DNA of 63,625 bases, the filler included, from Sluysia triapertura (lineage: Eukaryota), in the NCBI GenBank assembly GCA_046118255.1. It is 5 parts of 5 records of this genome, joined end to end, with 100 filler letters (N's around TTAATTAATTAA, not from the genome) between each part and the next. Parts side by side here need not be neighbours in the genome. Positions count along the whole stretch, not along the records: positions 23,456 to 36,363 come from JBJNIA010073277.1; 4 more parts are not named here. The stretch is one strand, 5' to 3'. The position numbers and the translations under genes are program-made. Positions within the stretch are counted from its first letter, which is position 1; every line of letters starts with the position of its first letter. A model generated the notes under the pieces. The model made no database searches. It was not told the DNA's origin and saw only the letters and a program-made list of their open reading frames with translations. Positions 1-36,363 of the stretch are shown here, in pieces.

Positions 1-71
1 ATGATTGAAAAGTATCAGATCTTTGCGACCCCCTTTCAGTAGTCTCGCGACCCACAGTTTAAGAAGCCCTG
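1..71. mobile_element. Terminus of a hAT-type DNA transposon/MITE (cut by window start)
   Basis: Reverse complement begins CAGGGCTTCTTAAACTGTGGGTCGCGA with repeated GCGACCC subterminal motifs, the pattern of hAT/Charlie-like ends. Confidence 0.6.
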
Positions 72-23599: not shown

Positions 23600-24870
23600 T
23601 AAGTGCACTAGCTGGCAACACTTACTGGGTGCTGAATATTGAAAAAAATTGGGTCCTCATCATAATCAACAAAGAGAATAATTTCTACTGCATTGTTGTT
23701 CTCAATACTTCTTTACGTCACCTCTATCTGTTACGTGACGCGGTGGTCAACCTTTCAAAGTTTATAAAAATCCCTTTCATAATATTACAAAATCATATAC
23801 ACCCTCAAAATCTACAATTTATATTCAAGAAATCAATATCAAACTAAACACACATATTGTACATAAAACCACACCCTGTAACATTTTAACATTCTCATAT
23901 ATCTTCTACATTCATCAAAACAATTCATCCGCTAACGTTAATTTATATCCACAGTCTCATAACATATTAACCACAATAACATTCTAAATCACCAAATTAT
24001 CTAAAGTATTTTATCCTTCACTTTAAACAATTCAATCACATTCACATTCGTAATCAATCACCAAATACTTTCAAAATAAATTTAAACACCATAAACCTAC
24101 ATATTGTACTATTTAATCTTAATAATCAAACACCATCATCACACACTTTAACGTCTACATTATTCTAAGTGTTTAGTTAGAATTACCTATATCTTAATAA
24201 CATTTCAGATAAAAGCATTATCCCAGTTAAAATATCAGAATCAATCGTGCAAAGTTACCTAATGCAGCACAAGCACCTGAAATCATCAAAAAATGCTTCA
24301 TCACTACACATCCATAAGGCTGAAAGTTCTTTTCGCTCTTACAACGTACATACGTTGAGAAAGATGAAAAATAAAAGAAAAGATTACGAAAGAACTAAAA
24401 CAATAATTTAAGCTTCATTAATAATAATAATAACATTCATTATCATTATTATTGTCAACATTTGAATTTTAATTAAACTAATATTAGGTTTTAAGCTTCT
24501 ACTTTACACTGGTTTTGACTTTAATATGTTAAGAAAGATAAAGAATCAAAACAAGATTGTGTAAAGAAATTAATTTTCAAGAAGTTTATATATTTTTAGT
24601 AATTAATAATAATTATAATACCTCATCATTATTATTTCAATATAATTAAAATAAAATTTCAATATACGCAGTTCTAATCAAGTGAGTTACTGCCATCATC
24701 AACAGCGACATTTTTGCTTTACAACTGTAATTTTATGTCACTGTTGATGATGGTAATCATCACAGTTGATTTCTATCGTCGCATATGGTTAATAGATTAT
24801 TGATTGTCCAACCAAATCAGTAGTCGGGTTTAAAAATCTAAAAATAATTATGGTTGGACAACCAATAGTG
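23600..24870 (+). mobile_element. Penelope-like remnant with double hairpin (copy 2)
   Basis: RGGQPFKVYK motif (~23740) in a C/A-skewed tract; inverted repeats at 24692-24754 and 24797-24869 homologous to copy 1. Confidence 0.45.
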
Positions 24871-25859
24871 ATAAAAAATTTTACGAAAATTTCATAATAA
24901 TAATTTCACAATTAGTGAAACAAAAAGAAAAAGAAAAATTGAATCCTTTTAAAAATCACAAAATCCTAGGACGACCTTAAAGTTAAAAGTCATAACAACG
25001 ATGACGATCTTAAAGTTAAAAGAAATGATAACGATGATTATAAATATATTAGTTTTAAAGTTAAAATTTATGTTAACAGTGATGATTAATACCAAGACGA
25101 CGGTCACAACTACCCCAACCATGTCGAAGATTATAATGATTATGGTGAACAGGATAAAGACAATGATTATGATGACAACAAAGAGTAATTATATCAAAAG
25201 TTTTCTTAAACAATACAACGATTATGATCACAACTTCACATAATATGCTGACGAAGAAGATTATAAAATCCAACATAACTATGATGATCTCTATAAAACA
25301 ATTCTACAAAACGGATTTTTCTGCCATATTCTGCTGATGATCAAGGATGTTGTCCGATGAATGGCGTAAAGTGCCGATATGCGCACAAGGTAAACGATTC
25401 CGAAATCGACTGTACTACCGCTCATTCCAGAGGATGACATGTAAGTTCCAGAGTATTGAGTCATGGCTAACTACACGTGTTCAAAACAATCTCGTAACTA
25501 AGATTAACAAAGTAGTAATAATGAAAGTAATTAACATCTTTCATTATAATAATAATAATAATAATTATGATTTATTTCCAGGTAACGACAAACGGAATCA
25601 ATCCAACGGCCTTTGCAGAATAAGACATTTAACTATTAACATTTTAGTTTTAAAATTTTGTAGTAGATATTTAAGTGTTTATGATTATTTTTTATGGTGT
25701 CTTAAATCAAAACTTTTGTTTAATTTTTTAATCCTAACAAAATTTAAATTAGAGTTCAACAGATTTCACCGTTTAAATAAATATCTAACAAATTTACATT
25801 TAAGATCAATCCTAAATCTGATTCAAAAACCTAACATAATAATAACATTACCAAACTTC

Positions 25860-27390
25860 AAAAATGTCATGGTTGCATACACTGTTCCTCTAGCGTACCC
25901 TAGTAAGCAGAATTTTGTACATAAGATTATTCCTTACCTGACACAAACTAGTCCTATCGATTGCGGTCCATTTATTTGTAACATTGCTTTGCAATATAAA
26001 CGCAATCCAGACATTATAATGTTTTCCCAACCCTGTATTGATGCCACAAGAGAAATACTCTGTAACGTATATCCCTCGGGACACTTCCTTTGCCCTCTGT
26101 TCAATAAAATCCTATCCGTTGAGAAACTGCCGCGCACTTGGAAATCCTTTACTACTCATCTTTTAATTATACCTAACAGCCCATTACAGTATCCGATGTG
26201 ACATATAGTCTTCACAAAAATCCTTAATGCCCGTCTTCTCTCCTGGGTACATGCCGGCAACCTTCTGATGGTTGCACCGATCATAACCTTTTTGTTACTC
26301 AAATTCATCCATTGGCGCAATCTTAATATCAACACACAAACCCTGTGCAGTCCTCATGCCAGACAACCATGGAACCTTCCCCGATCTGATGAAAAGGGCA
26401 ACAATCTCTTCAAGGGCTTCTTAGGCGTAAAGAATTTCCCTTTAACAATGCCTTCTTCTTTGCGCACAAAAATGGGTTTAGGCCTGACCTCTTCCAACGA
26501 CGACTACATATGCCAGAATATAGTCTGCGCTTTCTGACTTTTAAATAGTTGTAACCTTTCCTTTCATGAAATTGTCCGAGTTGCTATTGGTTGAATATGG
26601 GTAAATCTGATAGGCACACACGACTCCAAACTTGGTGGATCAAAATTCGGCGGTCTTGCCTCAATCTACAGCGTAAATATCGAATTTCTATCTCTTTGCT
26701 TCATTCTGAGGACTAAATTAAGTGCGACATCTTTGATGAAATCCTAAGTCATATTAAATCAGTTTCATAAAGAGAAAGTGGTGAAATATTTCCAATAGAA
26801 GCATTTGGAAATCCCTCAAAATCAAGGGTCATTTTGTGGACTGCCATTTCCTTACAACTAAACAATCAGATTTTGATCGTGAAACGACTGCCCATGTCTT
26901 ATGTCTGTGCCCTCATACTGTTATTGGTCGTACAGTGAGTCATAATAATAAGATGATAATAAGAAAGATTACGGAAGACCCGACATTCAGGTACTAATTC
27001 GACCCAACTCTTTCTATCGATGACTGTAACAAATTTAGGGCGACCAGGTCTCTTAATATTGCTAAGCACTCTGATGTTAGGGAGAAACTCCAATCGGAAC
27101 TTAAATTTCAGGTTTCCCTTGATACCTTTGGAACACTCGATTCGTAGGATCCCGAAAATGACATTCTCTTAAAAAGGTTAAGTTTCCGTAAAGCTGATAT
27201 CATTAAGTTGGCACACTAGTGATCAAGCTGTCATTGGAGCCATCCTTAACATTCTCTCCAGTCCTTTTTATACACACAATCCATCTCTTTTATAAACACG
27301 TACTTTTCTGGGACGTCCTATTTGTAAGCTTTCCCGGATATCTTACCAAGTGATGGTTATTCGAAACTGATTATTCTTATTAAACAATCT
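25860..27390 (+). mobile_element. Internally deleted RLE-type non-LTR retrotransposon (NeSL/R5-like) with Ulp1 protease
   Basis: QTSPIDCGPFIC (C48 catalytic Cys); RT start LFNKILSVEKLPRTWK..PITVSDVT..FTKILNARL, DGCTDHN; thumb GLGL..DDY; CCHC region ETTAHVLCLC..SHN; REL RRPDIQ. Central RT is missing. Confidence 0.8.
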
Positions 27391-27980
27391 TGTGGACCAT
27401 GTGTAACTCAAATCGAATCCTACCAGAAGTAGTAGTTAAATGTTGAATTGAATAAAAGCTCCTATTAAAAGTGATTCGTACTAATATTGGGTTATTTAAA
27501 CGAAACAATCTAACTGTTTCATTGCAGCTCTACTGCACACGTTTGTGAGTATAAAACCATTCGGTAAAATAAATTCTATAACATTTTCATTGGAAAATAT
27601 AAAATCATTTATTAATCAAAGCGATACTCATAATAAGGTAAAATAAAACCATAGATAAAAAATATATATACAAGAGATACATTTGTAGTATTGATTAGAT
27701 TCAAATTATCGAGAGTCAGAAGTAAAGGATGGGTTGTGAATCGAGAAGCCGCACGAAGGTACGTTGAAACTAAAATGTGATATGGATTTCATTCCAGATT
27801 CGGTAATGAAATGAAAGACTGTGTGAACAGTATCAGCTTTAATCATAAACTAAAAGCATTATTTGTGGCAGCGAAGATGTTCACCTTGCTTTACTACAAT
27901 ACAGTACAAAATATAAGTAAGCACTTGCCGGGAATGAAGCTATGCATACTACCTCCACTCTTCTCGATTCTGTGCGTGAA

Positions 27981-29594
27981 TCATACTCGTATTGCTCGGT
28001 AATGAGATGACATGTGAGTTGGAGATAACGTGGCTCCCACACTCAGTTCGCTGGGTACGAGATTCTGAGTTTGCTGTTGTTGTTTATGCAGTTGGCGTAT
28101 CTGGCTGCGAGCTGAAACAGACAAGTAGATGATCATTAGAACAACCATTATCAACGACAAAGAAATACCAATTATCTCCCAAGTCGTCAATTCCATGCTG
28201 CGGAATCCACCTGAAACAAATTATTTAATGGTAATTTACAATTACATAAATATTGATGAAAACAAAATGACTGAGTAAAATTATTTAAAACTGTATTGCA
28301 TTTACTTTATTTTCAAAAACACGAAAGATTACTCACAATCACCTACAAAGCATGACAGAAGCCAAGAATCAAGAAACATGAAGAAAAAAAGGAAGAATCC
28401 ATCGCACTTTTATTACCTTCAAGAATCAAAAATACAATTACAGTTATAAAACTTTCTTAGAAATTGAGCAGCAACAATAAAGAAAAAACAATCAATTTAA
28501 ACATAGAAACTGAAAGGAAAACTAACCACGACACAAAACATATACTGATTCGGCACTAAATTGCTTGGTTCCTCCGAATTCACAAGTGATTCTATTAGAA
28601 CCCACCAAATTAAGTTCATGGTCATCACAATTCAAAAGAATAGAAGTGACTGTCTGATTGCCAAGAGTGTCTTCGCCATTCAAAAAACAAGATCGAGTAT
28701 AACTTTGAGATTCTTTTATCTGAATTACAGAATCTGGAGATGACTAAAAAATGATTTTAAATTTAATTAAAAAACACTTACTATATTAACATAATTCCAT
28801 CTGTAACTAGTTGCAAGATTGTTACAATTGGAAAAACACGAAATGTTAATTTTAGCGCCATTCATAAGATCATACGGATTTGTACGAACACCAAGTCCAA
28901 GTAGAATTTGAGATCCAGAACTTTTAGTGGCAGTTTTATCATCTGCTAATTCTACTTGAAGTGATTTTAACTTCTGCAACACTGAAATAAGACAATGATT
29001 CATCAATGTTATTACTCTACAACACACTAAAATTCAAAGTTCACAATACATCACTTCTAATCAAAATAAAAACACTTCGTTTTGAATTAAATTACAATTC
29101 AAGTATTTGTAAATTTTAAATCTTTAAATTTTTCTTATATTTGACATAACTTTACAACCAAAAATAAATTAAACTTTTAAAATACAGAAAATTAAATTAC
29201 CTTTAATATCTATAATTTTCGTATTCGATTTCAAACCCGACATAGAACAATACCAAGTTCCGTTTTGATTCCACTGTAAACTTTTTATTCGATAAGTAAA
29301 TTTCAAGATCGAATTATCTAACTTTTCTAAACCAATACTTACATCTTCCTTATCGTATGGAATTAAATCTTCTGATTTATATTGGTGAGTTACTTTATCA
29401 ATGTGAACAAAAACAACTTTAAGTGCAGCATTTCTCTTTACAACACAAGTCAAATTCACGGATTCATTTAATTGATAATATTTACCATAAGAAGGTTTAG
29501 AAATATAAAAATCTTTAATTTGAAAACATTTTATGCGTATATGCAAGATCGAAACGATCAATATCAAAAATACATTGCAGCTACAATGATTCAT
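27981..29594 (-). CDS. Type-I membrane protein with two Ig-like domains (~347 aa; exons 29594-29201, 28981-28782, 28743-28527, 28210-27981; optional microexon 28342-28337)
   Basis: Signal peptide MNHCSCNVFLILIVSILHI; VNLTC...NGTWYC Ig; second Cys-containing Ig-like domain; TM IIGISLSLIMVVLMIIYL. All GT-AG junctions are phase-compatible (1,0,1) and the frame is open. Confidence 0.85.
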
Positions 29595-30173: not shown

Positions 30174-30681
30174 TTAATCACAATCTTTTATAAGTGAATC
30201 TGTTTTATTTGTAATTACGAGATTGTTTCCACTGTGTTGTAGTGGATGACGTGCGTGAACTGCGGAAGTTCCCGTTCCACTTGTACCTTTATAGTTAGGA
30301 TTGGTGCTTTCGTGTAGTGAAGTCGTTTGGGCATAATGACTGGAATTTCTAGTTAGTTTATGAGTACGATAAAACTGCTTTAGTTCGTTTATTACCTGAA
30401 TTGTAATAAATAATTTTAAATAAATTAACACAGAAATTCGTATAAATAACCTCTGAATTGATAAAGCAAAAGAGTAAGGATACGAAGAAACCCTGAAAAA
30501 AAAGTAAATCGAAGTTGTAATTAAACAAACTTGGCAAGATGTCATCGTATGTTCGTAGTATAATCGAACTATTTCGAATGAGTCAGAATTTATTTTATCA
30601 CTGAGAAGGAAAAGTGGAATCATAACCACGTCGTAAATTCCAAAAACGATAACCAATATGGCAGTTGCTTTGAGGACTTTT
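30174..30681 (-). CDS. Class B (secretin-family) GPCR, 3' exons TM6-TM7-tail (30681-30531, 30492-30451, 30395-30174)
   Basis: KVLKATAILVIVFG...TMTSCQ|GFFVSLLFCFINSE|VINELKQ matches the family-2 signature QGFFV.LxxCF.N.EV, including the characteristic 42-nt TM7 exon. 5' exons not found. Confidence 0.9.
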
Positions 30682-31464
30682 CTGAAAATAGTAACTTTAT
30701 GCTTTATTAAAATGAGAAAGTATTTGAACTGAATTCTAATAGTTATTTAATGTATTTCACGGTTTTTGTTTGGCGTGATAAATATTTGGAAGATGACGGA
30801 AGGTGATTGTGATATTACTAATTCAGAGCATATTTACGATGGTCGTTTTTCCTGAAAAATGAGAACAAAATGTCCGATGTTTGATTTGAAGTTCACGGAT
30901 AACGTTAGCGCCTAAGATACTGGCGCTTTGTAAGAAACAGAGAACTTTAACTTTAACATCTTTTAGAAATTTGTAAAGATTATGACCAATTAACTTCTTT
31001 TTGAAATATGAATTTTATTTGCCAGTAGCACATTGTTGCTTTGTAGTTTATGTGCATTCCTCTACTTCAGGACCAAGAAATTTTGAATCTTTTATTTTAC
31101 AAATGCATAAAATTGTACAGTGAATAAGAGCAGTAATTTTGGATATTATAAAATGTGGTTTCAAGTTTATTTAAAAGATCATATCAAAAATTATTTTTGG
31201 AAAGTGTTATATATTTATACTCAATTTAAATCGATGCATTATTTTATCAATAAGTACTGTTATAAAGATAGTAGTCAGACATACCAAGTATACTTAAAAA
31301 TATTCTTAATATTAGTAAGTGTACAAAATACAATCTTCGTAAATGTATTAAAAGTGTAAGAATATCGAATATGTAGTAGTATTTCTTTGATTGTAAATTT
31401 TCTTTCAACTTTTTATAATTATTTTATGAAAATTATCCAAATTTTTATTCAAAATTTTTAATAA

Positions 31465-32003
31465 ATTGCCCACCAGATTAATGGGCGGGCAAACCGGGCA
31501 ACTGCCCGGGCGCCAAATTTTGAGGGCCGCCGATATAAAAATAAAGTATTTTTTTAGATTTTATAAATTAAAATCGATCATTTTTCACGAGACATCGATT
31601 TTTTCAGCAAGTAATACATTTTTTTCTTTAATAAAACCAATAAATGTTACAACGAGCTAATTATTTTAATATTGTAAACTGTTTACAAACTGATTTTCAA
31701 AAAAATTAATTTAATTATCTATGTTATTGAATTTTTGACAAGTATCATTACAAAAAATCTTGTATGTCACACGTATGAAACAGGAATCGCTCCTTCGTCG
31801 CTGAAACTTCAAATGCTCAAGTTATGTTATTCCATATGTTGTATCGCTTGTAAGTAAATAACTGTCGTATTATTTTTTAAATAAATAATTTTTTACACAG
31901 TTCTTTACTATTTTTTAATTGGCAGTAAATTCGTGTATTCATGTATGAAATGGCGCCAAATTTTGCTTTACCCGGGGCGCTCAGAACCCTAGATCCGGCC
32001 CTG
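31465..32003. mobile_element. hAT-type MITE
   Basis: Right end rc CAGGGCCGGATCTAGGG; GC-rich subterminal GCCCGGGCGCCAAATTTT motifs at both ends; left TIR degenerate. Confidence 0.65.
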
Positions 32004-35000
32004 TGGATGGTTGAATGTTATTTCTTTTGAATTAATTTTTTAGTCTAAAAAGCCACCACAATAATAAACAATAAAGAAATAACGAAATAAATTTTAATAT
32101 ATGCAAATACTACTTATTAGATATTCAGATATTTAGAAGAGAAGACTTTTGATACATTTACTGATTTTGAGTTTTACTAAGTTTGAATTAGCAATTACTT
32201 ACAAATATTTAATTTTGTTTTTCTTTTTTTGAAAAATAGACAACCTAAAACTGCTTATTTATGTAACCTTTTATTTTTTGGCATTTTTAATTTTCAAAAT
32301 TTTAATTTTGTCGAAATACAAATAATTTAAAAAAATATCGACATTTGTTTATGTGATTTATCACAACAAACTGCATATAAAGTATAACAATGGATTCTAT
32401 GAACATTTCAAATCAAACTAAATATATTTGTCATACATCATTTCTCGTCCACATCCAAACAATTAGAAATATTGTGCATTGAATGGGCAAAGGTATCGAT
32501 GATTTTTATTATCAGCGGTTTTATTAACACTGAACATACCAAGGATTGATATGTGTCTATTCACACCATATACTGTTTAACAATGTTCATTTATTTGATT
32601 ATGTATTATAATTTCACAGTATTTTCATTTGATCAGTCGTGGTAGGTCTAGTGTTAAATATGGACCTGGGTTCTATAAACATGATAATAGAAATCAAAAT
32701 TCCAACAAACATTATCATAAGTAATGCGCTTAATCTTGATCAAAATTCACAAACAAATTCAAGAATACCCATTTATCTAATTGTTACTTATGCCTATAAA
32801 CGTTCTCACATTCAAAAGTTATAACTAATTTCTTCAGATGCATATTTTATCATTGGCTAATTTCTTACAGTTGGATATTTTTATCTATCCACAGCAATAA
32901 TTATATAACATGTCCGGATCTCAATATATTTGAAACTTTATCACAAAGTAGACACAGAATATTACAATCTATTATTTGACCTACAGATGATGTAGTGTAG
33001 TGTTGATATATGCTTCACATGAACAACTACAAAGCACATTGAAGTTTTCACCGAATATATTTCACTATTTGGATAATAATCGTAATGATAATAATAAGAG
33101 TCAAGATCTAAGTAAGATTCCAGATAGAAATATCTTCGATTTAGAAAAATTGTAAACTTGTATAAATGTTGTATCCAAACACATAATGGTGTGGAGTATA
33201 CTAAATATTATGACACAGATTATCGTATTATAAAAATTAATAAGAATTTCAACATTGTATAATAATTTAGAATACTTATCAGAAAAAATAAAGGTGAAGC
33301 GTGTAAATANNNNNNNNNNNNNNNNNNNNNNNNNNNNNNNNNNNNNNNNNNNNNNNNNNNNNNNNNNNNNNNNNNNNNNNNNNNNNNNNNNNNNNNNNNN
33401 NNNNNNNNNNNNNNNNNNNNNNNNNNNNNNNNNNNNNNNNNNNNNNNNNNNNNNNNNNNNNNNNNNNNNNNNNNNNNNNNNNNNNNNNAAAATGATCGTG
33501 AAAATGTGCACTAAAATGATGTTACTATCACTGCTAAAGTTCTGTAAAAATCAAGAAATAGTCTTTTGAAATAATACAACAATAGAAAAGGATAAGGTTG
33601 AAAAATCTTATTACTTATTGCTGTATGGATACAAAAAAAGAAAGTATGCAGTATGACTAGTTGGTGGAAATGAACTGAGATATGAAAATGGATGATATTC
33701 AAGATTCCACAGACAGAAACAGATTTAATGATCTGAAAGTTCTGTTTAGATATCAAGTCAAACTTTGAAAAACCAATCACAAGAAAGACGATAACAGACA
33801 GATTGTGTTCATTTAACTGTGTTCGTGATTGGCGCTCTGGAATCATGACATCCGAACAAAAAATTAATACATTTGCTGAATACATTTGCTAGATATCAAT
33901 AATAATTAATTATGATAATGATAATAATAATAATAATGCAACGGGAACGAGGAAAATTATTTTTCAACTGTCAGATTTAGTTACAATTCAACGCGATTTA
34001 AAGAAAACGCAAATTCATAAATATTTTTAAACAATCGATAAAATATCTCAAAAATATATAAAGAAATATTTTATAATAAATTGTAAAAGCGATATTATCG
34101 TTAAAAAATATTAATTTAAAAGTAATATTAGTTTGATATTTAATTCTACGAATAGCGGATTGAGACGTTTATAATATTGTAAAGAAGTTTATTATTACTG
34201 CGATTGTTGTGAGACATTTTAAATTGTGGTATAAAATCGTGATTAAAATTTTGATAGAATATGTTAAGTTCGGTGACTGTTAACTTCGTATAGAATTTTG
34301 ATATTCTAACTGTTCAGCCTATGTTTCATTATAAGACTTGAACCACGGACAAAGTTTTCTTACATCAGATGTTAGAACTCTTGGACGCGCTCATCAAGAG
34401 GGTTTTATTAATTTTTCGGAAAATAAAAGGAACAAATCGGTTGCTCGGAATCATCAGAAATATTGTTTCGTCTCGTACTTTCAATTTGTAAAATCGATTT
34501 AAAACTACCTAATATTGGTTTTCAGGTAAATCTTGTAATTATTTGTATTGTCTCTCAGTATTTATCTTTGATTTACCTTCGCATTCAACCAAATATTAAT
34601 CGATACGTTGTATCCGAAGTTAGAAGTTATTAAAATTAGATAAAACTATAAAAGTTGATGGTTATATGAGTAAATATAATGTTACAAAATGTTATTTTAA
34701 AATGAGATGTGATTATTGAAAAATATAAAAGAAAGTGTAACATAAAGTTAATGATCAAATGAATCATTTTTGAAAGATTGTAAACTTTTGTTAGACAAAG
34801 ATATTCACTCTGTGTAAATTGTGCGTTATTTGTTAATTATAGATTATTACAGGGATATTTGTGATTAAATAAGCGAGCTGATTTAACTTCTAATTTCACA
34901 ACAAAAATTGTATTTCGTCTAACGTCTTTGATAATACAGCTTCACATAGTCTATAATTAATTCTGTGGTATTTTAATACTGTTTCCACATATTTGTAAAA

Positions 35001-36263: not shown

Positions 36264-36363
36264 AAATTATTGAAACAATCGTTGTGAAATTATTGAAACA
36301 ATCGTTGTGAAATTATTGAAACAATCGTTGTGAAATTATTGAAACAATCGTTGTGAAATTATT
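36264..36363. repeat. 23-bp minisatellite (AAATTATTGAAACAATCGTTGTG)n running into a gap
   Basis: Four identical units plus a partial unit, no spacers. Confidence 0.95.

What the first reader, a model, noticed from the sequence alone, without database searches (positions are those of the whole stretch)
28337..28342. 6-nt microexon that would switch on a Cys-flanked RGD motif in an Ig membrane protein
Seen: in intron 3 (minus strand) a long pyrimidine-rich tract ends CATGCTTTGTAG|GTGATT|GTGAGT, i.e. acceptor, 6 nt, consensus donor. Exon 3 ends TGT CGT G and exon 4 begins GT GGA TTC. Skipping gives C-R-G-G-F; inclusion gives C-R-G-D-C-G-F about 10 residues before the TM helix. Known: RGD is the canonical integrin ligand, CRGDC is a disulfide-cyclisable form, and UGC just upstream of the 3' splice site is the Srrm4/eMIC neural-microexon signature (a TGC lies ~10 nt upstream here). 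Inference: a splicing-controlled integrin-adhesion switch, or alternatively a constitutive exon supplying a structural Cys.
Basis: partly seen in the sequence, partly recalled or inferred. Interest (0 to 1): 0.85.

Follow-up and report, generated by a model that had tools for sequence, protein, structure and literature searches.

The report
Unverified six-base microexon candidate
An intron of a small Ig-like membrane-protein gene holds a six-base stretch flanked by the signals typical of real microexons, but no RNA or cross-species data could be had, so its use and the proposed RGD integrin switch remain unproven.

Summary
The sequence is as described. On the minus strand, TTTGTAG|GTGATT|GTGAGT lies at 28337-28342, inside the 316-nt third intron of a four-exon gene (29594..27981). 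The gene encodes a 346-aa type I membrane protein: signal peptide, V-set-like Ig, a four-Cys sushi-like module, a TM helix and a short tail. The splice phase is 1, so skipping reads C-R-G-G-F and inclusion reads C-R-G-D-C-G-F.

The bare AG-N6-GTRAGT motif is common: three occur on this strand in 12.9 kb. Its context is not common. The 50 nt upstream are 80% pyrimidine (top 0.04% of windows), carry TTCTT four times (0.15 expected) and end in a UGC at -10..-8. Only 0.01% of dinucleotide shuffles of the intron give an equal candidate. This matches the published microexon architecture.

Nothing could test actual use.

I put about 45-50% on a genuine exon, alternative or constitutive, and about 35% on a chance pseudo-exon. 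The integrin-switch reading has no support. The Cys before RGD looks like the last Cys of the sushi-like module, so it is probably already paired, which argues against a cyclised CRGDC. A further rival is use of the acceptor without the donor, which reads G-D-C-E-stop followed by AATAAA, a possible secreted isoform.

The parts
29201..29594 (-). Exon 1: ATG, signal peptide, V-set-like Ig domain. It ends in phase 1, with donor GTAATT.
   Evidence: ORF and sequence. Pfam V-set E=0.0011, 19.6 bits, below the gathering score of 26. Atlas feature hits to V-set clusters at 0.94-0.95. Weak PDB hits to antibody light-chain V domains over residues 42-117.
28782..28981 (-). Exon 2 (200 nt), extracellular, two Cys and N-glycosylation sequons. 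The acceptor is TTATTTCAG. Intron 2 (28744-28781) is only 38 nt, with donor GTAAGT.
   Evidence: Sequence read directly. The frame is continuous with exons 1 and 3. No Pfam family.
28527..28743 (-). Exon 3 (217 nt): a linker plus a four-Cys sushi/CCP-like module ending ...V-L-C-R-G. The donor is G|GTTAGT, phase 1.
   Evidence: Translation. In-register matches to the sushi repeats of P0005. A profile of those repeats scores exon 3 at 13.9 bits, against a maximum of 10.0 in 2000 shuffles, but that profile came from a hit to this query, so the test is circular. Pfam Sushi was not hit at E<=1.
28211..28526 (-). Intron 3 as drawn without the microexon (316 nt). With the microexon it splits into 184 nt (28343-28526) and 126 nt (28211-28336).
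28345..28398 (-). Pyrimidine tract upstream of the candidate acceptor: 80% C+T over 50 nt, TTCTT four times, no UCUC.
   Evidence: top 0.036% of 50-nt windows, one of two such loci in the piece. (TTCTT 4 observed against 0.15 expected). The sequence is unique in the window. The region is not structured as RNA (z = +1.85).
28350..28352 (-). UGC at -10..-8 from the candidate exon, between the pyrimidine tract and the AG.
   Evidence: One TGC in the 60 nt upstream against 0.45 expected, so on its own it is weak evidence.
28343..28344 (-). Candidate acceptor AG (TTTGTAG|). The preceding AG is 62 nt upstream, at 28407-28408.
28337..28342 (-). Candidate 6-nt exon GTGATT. It inserts Asp-Cys and keeps the frame.
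   Evidence: It is the only AG-(3..51 nt)-GTRAGT candidate in intron 3.
28331..28336 (-). Candidate donor GTGAGT. All six intronic positions match the U1 consensus GTRAGT; the exonic side (ATT) does not match.
   Evidence: There are only 5 GTRAGT sites on the minus strand of the piece.
28329..28331 (-). In-frame TAA reached if the acceptor is used but the donor is not (frame reads G-D-C-E-stop).
   Evidence: Read directly.
28306..28311 (-). AATAAA 18 nt after that stop: a possible poly(A) signal for an alternative terminal exon giving a secreted isoform.
   Evidence: Read directly. AATAAA is frequent by chance in DNA this AT-rich, so this is weak evidence.
27981..28210 (-). Exon 4: G-F-R-S-M-E-L-T-T, a TM helix (about 28116-28181), a basic and Gln-rich tail, and the TGA stop. 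AATAAA at 27608-27613 is the likely normal poly(A) signal.
   Evidence: Translation, sequence.

Best explanation
The locus is a four-exon gene for a small type I membrane protein with a signal peptide, a V-set-like Ig domain, a four-Cys sushi-like module, a TM helix and a short tail. It belongs to an AT-rich animal with very short introns and appears to be lineage-restricted.

Its third intron carries a candidate 6-nt cassette exon whose flanks have the layout described for genuine microexons. A long pyrimidine tract rich in UUCUU ends in a UGC just before a weak-context AG, and a full-consensus 5' splice site lies 6 nt downstream.

My most likely reading is that the spliceosome really uses this exon, either in some cell types or constitutively as two ordinary short introns of 184 and 126 nt. 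Inclusion would insert Asp-Cys into the stalk between the last extracellular module and the membrane.

Shown: the sequence, the frame arithmetic and the rarity of the flanking tract. Inferred: that the site is spliced at all, and any regulation. The most probable consequence for the protein is an extra, unpaired juxtamembrane Cys (for example an interchain disulfide) and a two-residue longer stalk, not an integrin-binding loop.
For: Exact motif and frame.

The tract upstream of the AG is in the top 0.036% of 50-nt windows for pyrimidine content and is one of only two such loci in 25.8 kb of strand sequence.

TTCTT occurs four times against 0.15 expected. The tract is about 20% C (my count from the letters printed), in a gene whose other introns are 3-5% C.

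Only 0.01% of dinucleotide shuffles of the intron give a frame-preserving, stop-free AG-(3..27)-GTRAGT with such a tract.

The true acceptors of this gene have no comparable tract: 54-60% pyrimidine over the last 50 nt. The tract is therefore not a general requirement of this genome.

Published architecture of SRRM3/4- and eMIC-dependent microexons: strong 5' splice site, strong but distal Py tract, a bipartite UCU_CUC[N1-50]_UGC enhancer and a long AG-exclusion zone.

Six-nt microexons are real and often unannotated in a short-intron animal. In C. elegans, madd-4 exon 6 is 6 nt, 100-176 microexons are known, and 85% of the canonical ones are multiples of three.

The 184-nt and 126-nt halves fall within the intron range seen here (38-219 nt).
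Against: There is no orthologue to test conservation.

The bare AG-N6-GTRAGT motif occurs three times on this strand by chance.

Introns on the coding strand are T-rich anyway (45-53% T). The shuffle figure therefore overstates rarity.

The tract has no UCUC and only one UGC. The 62-nt AG-free zone is not distinctive here; intron 3's true acceptor has about 58 nt.

The exonic side of the donor (ATT) is non-consensus.

An odd Cys next to the membrane is an unusual insertion.

The prior for any one intron holding a microexon is about 1e-3 to 1e-2. My posterior of roughly 0.5 rests on rough likelihoods.
Confidence: 0.47

Rival explanations
1. Chance pseudo-exon. The AG, the six bases and the GTGAGT are an accidental arrangement inside an ordinary 316-nt intron. 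The T/C-rich tract is neutral intron sequence or serves some other purpose. Exon 3 is always joined directly to exon 4.
For: AG-N6-GTRAGT occurs three times on the minus strand of 12.9 kb, once inside exon 1 and once in non-coding DNA with a T-rich upstream flank. Most GTRAGT sites in the piece have an AG 3-30 nt upstream. 2.8% of shuffled introns hold a frame-preserving candidate. Introns here are 45-53% T. No homologue shows the insertion.
Against: The candidate coincides with the most pyrimidine-rich tract of the piece and with a UGC in the published position. The joint chance is about 1e-4 to 3e-4 per intron, comparable to or below the prior for a real microexon that looks like this.
Confidence: 0.35
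2. Alternative terminal exon. The acceptor at 28343 is used but the GTGAGT donor is not. The frame then reads G-D-C-E-stop (TAA at 28329-28331), and the AATAAA at 28306-28311 directs polyadenylation. The product is a secreted ectodomain lacking the TM helix and ending ...C-R-G-D-C-E. Membrane versus soluble isoforms made by competition between splicing and polyadenylation are common for Ig-family receptors (own knowledge).
For: Stop codon and AATAAA read directly. The strong tract and acceptor are the same as for the main explanation.
Against: A full-consensus U1 site 6 nt into the exon would normally be spliced and would suppress a nearby poly(A) site. AATAAA is frequent by chance in DNA with 25-35% G+C. 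There are no RNA data.
Confidence: 0.08
3. One reading: a regulated (Srrm/eMIC-type, neural) microexon that switches on an integrin-binding, disulfide-cyclised C-R-G-D-C motif.
For: Inclusion does create R-G-D flanked by two Cys. The UGC and pyrimidine tract fit eMIC-type exons. Ig-family adhesion proteins can carry functional RGD motifs, for example L1 (listed, PMC2276031).
Against: The first Cys aligns with the fourth Cys of a sushi-like module and is probably paired inside that module. Apart from one Cys (residue 23) at the predicted signal-peptide boundary, the ectodomain already has an even number of Cys (8) without the insert. The motif lies about 10 residues from the protein's own membrane, a poor position for binding in trans. 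RGD tripeptides are common without any function. There are no orthologues, and no expression or binding data.
Confidence: 0.05
4. Recursive (two-step) splicing site. The juxtaposed AG|GTGATT acts as a ratchet point, and the downstream GTGAGT serves only to define it. The final mRNA usually lacks the six bases.
For: AG is directly followed by GT (AG|GTGATT), with a second, stronger donor 6 nt downstream. This is the layout of recursive-splice exons (own knowledge).
Against: Known recursive sites serve introns of many kilobases; this one is 316 nt. The regenerated donor GTGATT is weaker than GTGAGT.
Confidence: 0.03

Closest known systems
SRRM3/4 (eMIC-domain)-dependent neural microexons of bilaterians
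   Same: Length in the 3-27 nt range and a multiple of three. Full-consensus 5' splice site. Long pyrimidine tract set back from the AG. UGC between tract and AG. Located in a cell-surface protein (architecture).
   Different: No UCUC in the tract, only UUCUU. Inclusion, neural enrichment and dependence on an Srrm protein are all untested. The organism is unknown, so even the presence of an eMIC domain is unknown.
C. elegans 6-nt microexon madd-4 exon 6 and the RBM-25/PRP-40-dependent microexon set (bioRxiv 10.64898/2026.09.14.751627)
   Same: A 6-nt, frame-preserving cassette with GT-AG sites in a short-intron animal and in a secreted or cell-surface protein. About 40% of such exons were unannotated before targeted mapping.
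   Different: Those exons are supported by RNA-seq, RT-PCR and reporters. This one has no RNA support and no demonstrated conservation.
Mini-exon peptides (meA/meB) of LAR-family receptor phosphatases and the RSLE/VASE mini-exons of L1/NCAM (own knowledge, not tested here)
   Same: Very short alternative inserts in the ectodomains of Ig-family membrane proteins that change binding specificity.
   Different: Those inserts lie within or between Ig domains and do not create an RGD or add a Cys. The present insert would be juxtamembrane.
RGD-bearing Ig-family adhesion molecules such as L1 (PMC2276031)
   Same: An Ig-family membrane protein with an RGD exposed outside the cell, if the exon is included.
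   Different: In L1 the RGD is constitutive, lies within an Ig domain, and has been shown to bind integrin. Here the RGD is hypothetical, sits next to the membrane and is untested. No paper in the library links a microexon to the creation of an RGD.

Membership tests
eMIC/SRRM3/4-type microexon | Exon of 3-27 nt that preserves the reading frame | tested here: met
   6 nt, phase 1-1, no stop codon created.
eMIC/SRRM3/4-type microexon | UGC between the pyrimidine tract and the 3' splice-site AG | tested here: met
   TGC at 28352..28350, i.e. -10..-8. The expected count in 60 nt is 0.45, so this is weak on its own.
eMIC/SRRM3/4-type microexon | Long, distal pyrimidine tract enriched in UCUC/CU repeats | tested here: inconclusive
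   80% pyrimidine over 50 nt, TTCTT four times, but UCUC zero times.
eMIC/SRRM3/4-type microexon | Strong 5' splice site | tested here: met
   GTGAGT matches all six intronic consensus positions; the exonic positions do not match.
eMIC/SRRM3/4-type microexon | Actual inclusion in mRNA, neural enrichment, loss on Srrm depletion | not testable with these tools
eMIC/SRRM3/4-type microexon | Conservation of the exon and its flanks in related species | tested here: inconclusive
   No relative of any exon was found in the protein collections or the metagenome contigs. No eukaryotic genome collection was available.
Immunoglobulin superfamily (V-set) | Significant match to an Ig-domain profile, with the B-strand Cys and the F-strand Y-x-C | tested here: inconclusive
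   Pfam V-set E=0.0011, 19.6 bits against a cut-off of 26. Atlas feature hits to V-set clusters at 0.94-0.95. PDB light-chain V domains at E 0.18-1.3. L-T-C and W-Y-C are present. The AlphaFold model was unusable (pLDDT 35).
Sushi/CCP domain | Four Cys with sushi spacing and the G-x-x-L-x-G...C core | tested here: met
   C-x20-C-x15-C-x16-C, with N-L-V-G-S-N-R-I-T-C aligned to sushi repeats.
Sushi/CCP domain | Match to the Pfam Sushi profile and the conserved Trp after the third Cys | tested here: not met
   No Pfam hit at E<=1. In the alignments the match ends at G-T, just before the sushi repeats' G-T-W Trp (repeat sequence), and the query reads G-T-K there. I therefore call the module sushi-like only. 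The AlphaFold model was unusable (pLDDT 41).
RGD integrin ligand | RGD tripeptide in an extracellular, exposed position | tested here: inconclusive
   RGD arises only if the exon is included. It would lie in the stalk 9-11 residues from the TM helix. Exposure could not be modelled.
RGD integrin ligand | RGD-dependent binding to an integrin | not testable with these tools
   Needs an adhesion or binding assay.
Recursive splice site | Juxtaposed 3' and 5' splice sites (AG|GT) inside a very long intron | tested here: not met
   AG|GTGATT is present, but the intron is only 316 nt.

The most novel reading that the evidence does not exclude
Use of the acceptor at 28343 creates an R-G-D that the gene otherwise lacks. 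It would appear either in a membrane isoform (C-R-G-D-C-G-F, donor used) or in a secreted isoform ending C-R-G-D-C-E (donor skipped, AATAAA used). A single splice decision would then turn an orphan Ig/sushi-like surface protein into a cis-acting or soluble integrin ligand. No paper in the searched library describes a microexon that creates an RGD.
Probability: 0.05. Interest if true: 0.7.

Novelty: new member of a known kind. Interest (0 to 1): 0.3.

Why it matters
If the six bases are spliced in, this would be one more very short microexon in a cell-surface Ig-family protein. It would also be missed by ordinary gene prediction and read mapping, which argues for microexon-aware annotation of this genome. 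It would be of wider interest only if inclusion were regulated and the RGD or the extra Cys changed adhesion or dimerisation, and nothing here shows that. As it stands, it is a well-formed candidate with a simple decisive test, not a discovery.

Tried and rejected

Homologues:
- Exon 1 and exon 4 searches in the 5.8-billion-protein collection found nothing.
- An exhaustive HMMER search with exon 3 against 1.84 billion representatives gave six weak hits, all to repeat proteins. One was a sushi-repeat protein. There was no orthologue and no self-hit.
- Exon 1 and exon 3 searches in metagenome contigs found nothing.
- A blank says little, given the length limits of the word-based search and the lack of any eukaryotic genome collection.

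Structure:
- AlphaFold on exon 3 and on the mature part of exon 1, each as a single sequence, gave pLDDT 41 and 35. Both were unusable, so no fold search was run.
- PDB sequence searches were weak.

Other negatives:
- No Rfam family and no tRNA in the piece.
- No stable RNA structure around the candidate.
- The tract is not a repeat within the window.
- Pfam did not confirm my reading of the neighbouring gene as a class B GPCR.

Exons were searched one by one by reference.

The organism could not be identified.

Full report
**The observation**

Read on the minus strand, the window shows ...TCATGCTTTGTAG | GTGATT | GTGAGTAATC.... A regular-expression scan of the intron finds this as the only AG-(3..51 nt)-GTRAGT arrangement in it.

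**The gene**

ORF listing and direct reading give a coherent four-exon model on the minus strand.

| Part | Coordinates | Notes |
|---|---|---|
| Exon 1 | 29594..29201 | ATG, hydrophobic signal peptide, L-T-C ... W-Y-C Ig signature |
| Intron 1 | 219 nt | GTAATT...TTTCAG |
| Exon 2 | 28981..28782 | |
| Intron 2 | 38 nt | GTAAGT...TTTTAG |
| Exon 3 | 28743..28527 | ends ...V-L-C-R-G, donor G\|GTTAGT |
| Intron 3 | 316 nt | |
| Exon 4 | 28210..27981 | G-F-R-S-M-E-L-T-T, a 22-residue TM helix, basic/Gln-rich tail, TGA |

An AATAAA lies at 27608-27613. The product is 346 aa and has the layout of a type I membrane protein with several N-glycosylation sequons in the ectodomain.

- Exon 1 is V-set-like, but only weakly so. 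Pfam gives E=0.0011, below the gathering score. Atlas feature hits to V-set clusters score 0.94-0.95. Antibody light-chain V domains match at E 0.2-1.3.
- Exon 3 holds four Cys with sushi/CCP spacing and aligns in register with sushi repeats of a protein found by the exhaustive search. It misses the conserved Trp and gets no Pfam Sushi hit, so I call it sushi-like only.
- The exons have more G+C (32-35%) than the flanking DNA (20-25%), which supports a real gene.

**Frame arithmetic**

Exon 3 ends in phase 1, with one G carried over.

**Is it more than chance?**

The bare motif is not.
- The 12.9-kb piece has 14 GTRAGT sites and 18 AG-(3..30)-GTRAGT combinations.
- Three of these have a 6-nt spacing on the minus strand: one inside exon 1 and one in non-coding DNA at 23631-23626.
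- 2.8% of dinucleotide-preserving shuffles of intron 3 contain some frame-preserving, stop-free candidate.

The flank is a different matter.
- The 50 nt before the AG are 80% pyrimidine. Only 0.036% of the 25,260 fifty-base windows of the piece reach that, at two loci.
- TTCTT occurs four times in 60 nt against 0.15 expected. The tract is about 20% C (my count from the letters printed), while introns 1 and 2 are 3-5% C.
- The true acceptors of this gene have only 54-60% pyrimidine over their last 50 nt. The tract is therefore not something every 3' splice site here needs.
- With the tract required, 0.01% of shuffles qualify.
- Shuffling removes local clustering, and introns on the coding strand are T-rich (45-53% T). 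I therefore take 1e-4 to 3e-4 per intron as the chance rate.
- The tract is unique in the window and unstructured as RNA (z = +1.85).

**Comparison with known microexons**

Published descriptions give SRRM3/4-dependent microexons the following features:
- a strong 5' splice site;
- strong but distal pyrimidine-tract and branch-point signals;
- a bipartite UCU_CUC[N1-50]_UGC enhancer.

Drosophila eMIC exons have long AG-free zones, UGC close to the 3' splice site and long CU-rich tracts. The candidate has the UGC at -10..-8, the long tract (UUCUU rather than UCUC), a 62-nt AG-free zone and GTGAGT. The AG-free zone is not distinctive here, because the real exon 4 acceptor has about 58 nt.

In C. 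elegans, another short-intron animal, 100-176 microexons are known. Of the canonical ones, 85% are multiples of three, about 40% were unannotated, and a 6-nt example (madd-4 exon 6) has been validated. That gives a prior of roughly 1e-3 per intron. I would put it somewhat higher for Ig-family surface proteins (own knowledge). If about 5-10% of real microexons look this good, the real and chance hypotheses come out of similar size, with a modest edge to real.

**What could not be tested**

- No relative of any exon was found. This covers exon 1 and exon 4 in the word-indexed collection, exon 3 in the exhaustive search of 1.84 billion representatives, and exons 1 and 3 in metagenome contigs.
- There was not even a self-hit, so this genome and its transcripts are not in the collections. 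Conservation is untested rather than absent.
- Exons were handled one at a time by reference.
- Single-sequence AlphaFold models of exon 3 and exon 1 were unusable (pLDDT 41 and 35).

**Consequences for the protein, if the exon is included**

The Cys before R-G aligns with the fourth Cys of the sushi-like module. In sushi domains that Cys pairs with the second Cys (established knowledge). Past the signal peptide the ectodomain has eight Cys without the insert, plus one (residue 23) at the predicted cleavage boundary.

The inserted Cys is therefore more likely an extra, free juxtamembrane Cys, which could form an interchain disulfide, than the partner of a C-R-G-D-C loop. The RGD would sit about 10 residues from the protein's own membrane, which is awkward for binding an integrin on another cell. 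RGD is short enough to arise often by chance. The library held no paper in which a microexon creates an RGD, so the idea would be new, but nothing here supports it.

If the acceptor is used but the GTGAGT is not, the frame reads G-D-C-E and stops at TAA (28331..28329). An AATAAA follows at 28311..28306. That would be an alternative terminal exon giving a secreted ectodomain.

I rate it low. A consensus U1 site so close would normally be spliced, and AATAAA is common in DNA this AT-rich. Recursive splicing at AG|GT is also formally possible, but it is out of place in a 316-nt intron.

**Verdict**

| Reading | Probability |
|---|---|
| Genuine microexon, alternative or constitutive (the integrin-switch row below is a sub-case of this one) | about 0.47 |
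| Chance pseudo-exon | about 0.35 |
| Alternative terminal exon (secreted isoform) | about 0.08 |
| Recursive splice site | about 0.03 |

It is a good candidate with a cheap decisive test (junction reads or RT-PCR). If real, it is a new member of a known kind.

The source organism is unknown. It is an AT-rich animal (20-35% G+C) with introns as short as 38 nt and TTTCAG-type acceptors.

Noticed in passing
window 30177-30700, minus strand: The upstream neighbour ends here. Three short exons read ...F-R-K-V-L-K-A-T-A-I-L-V-I-V-F-G-I-Y..., then Q-G-F-F-V-S-L-L-F-C-F-I-N-S-E-V, then I-N-E-L-K-Q-F-Y-R... and a Ser/Thr-rich tail. They are separated by introns of about 38 and 55 nt. From memory, the middle motif is the TM7 signature of secretin-type (class B) GPCRs. 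Pfam did not detect 7tm_2 on these short pieces, so this is a lead only.
   Followed up: partly
window 23626-23631, minus strand: A second AG|6 nt|GTAAGT (TTTCAATATTCAG|CACCCA|GTAAGT) with a 75% pyrimidine 20-nt flank, in apparently non-coding DNA. It shows that the bare motif arises by chance.
   Followed up: no
window 25900-27450: A block with 37-42% G+C in a 20-33% background, with many short broken ORFs on both strands and no Pfam match. It may be a decayed mobile element.
   Followed up: partly
window 36264-36363: A perfect 23-bp tandem repeat (4.3 copies, 100% identical) running into the edge of the piece.
   Followed up: no
window 31500-31535 and 31955-32010, minus strand: Two short G+C-rich islands about 450 nt apart in very AT-rich DNA. 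Both contain AAAATTTGGCGCC followed by a CCGGG-type sequence. They may be the ends of a small inserted element. No inverted repeat was found between them.
   Followed up: partly
window 33309-33487: An assembly gap or masked stretch of 179 N.
   Followed up: no
window 24949-25037: A 33-bp tandem repeat (about 2 copies, 80-85% identity) inside a stretch that gives long low-complexity ORFs on both strands.
   Followed up: no
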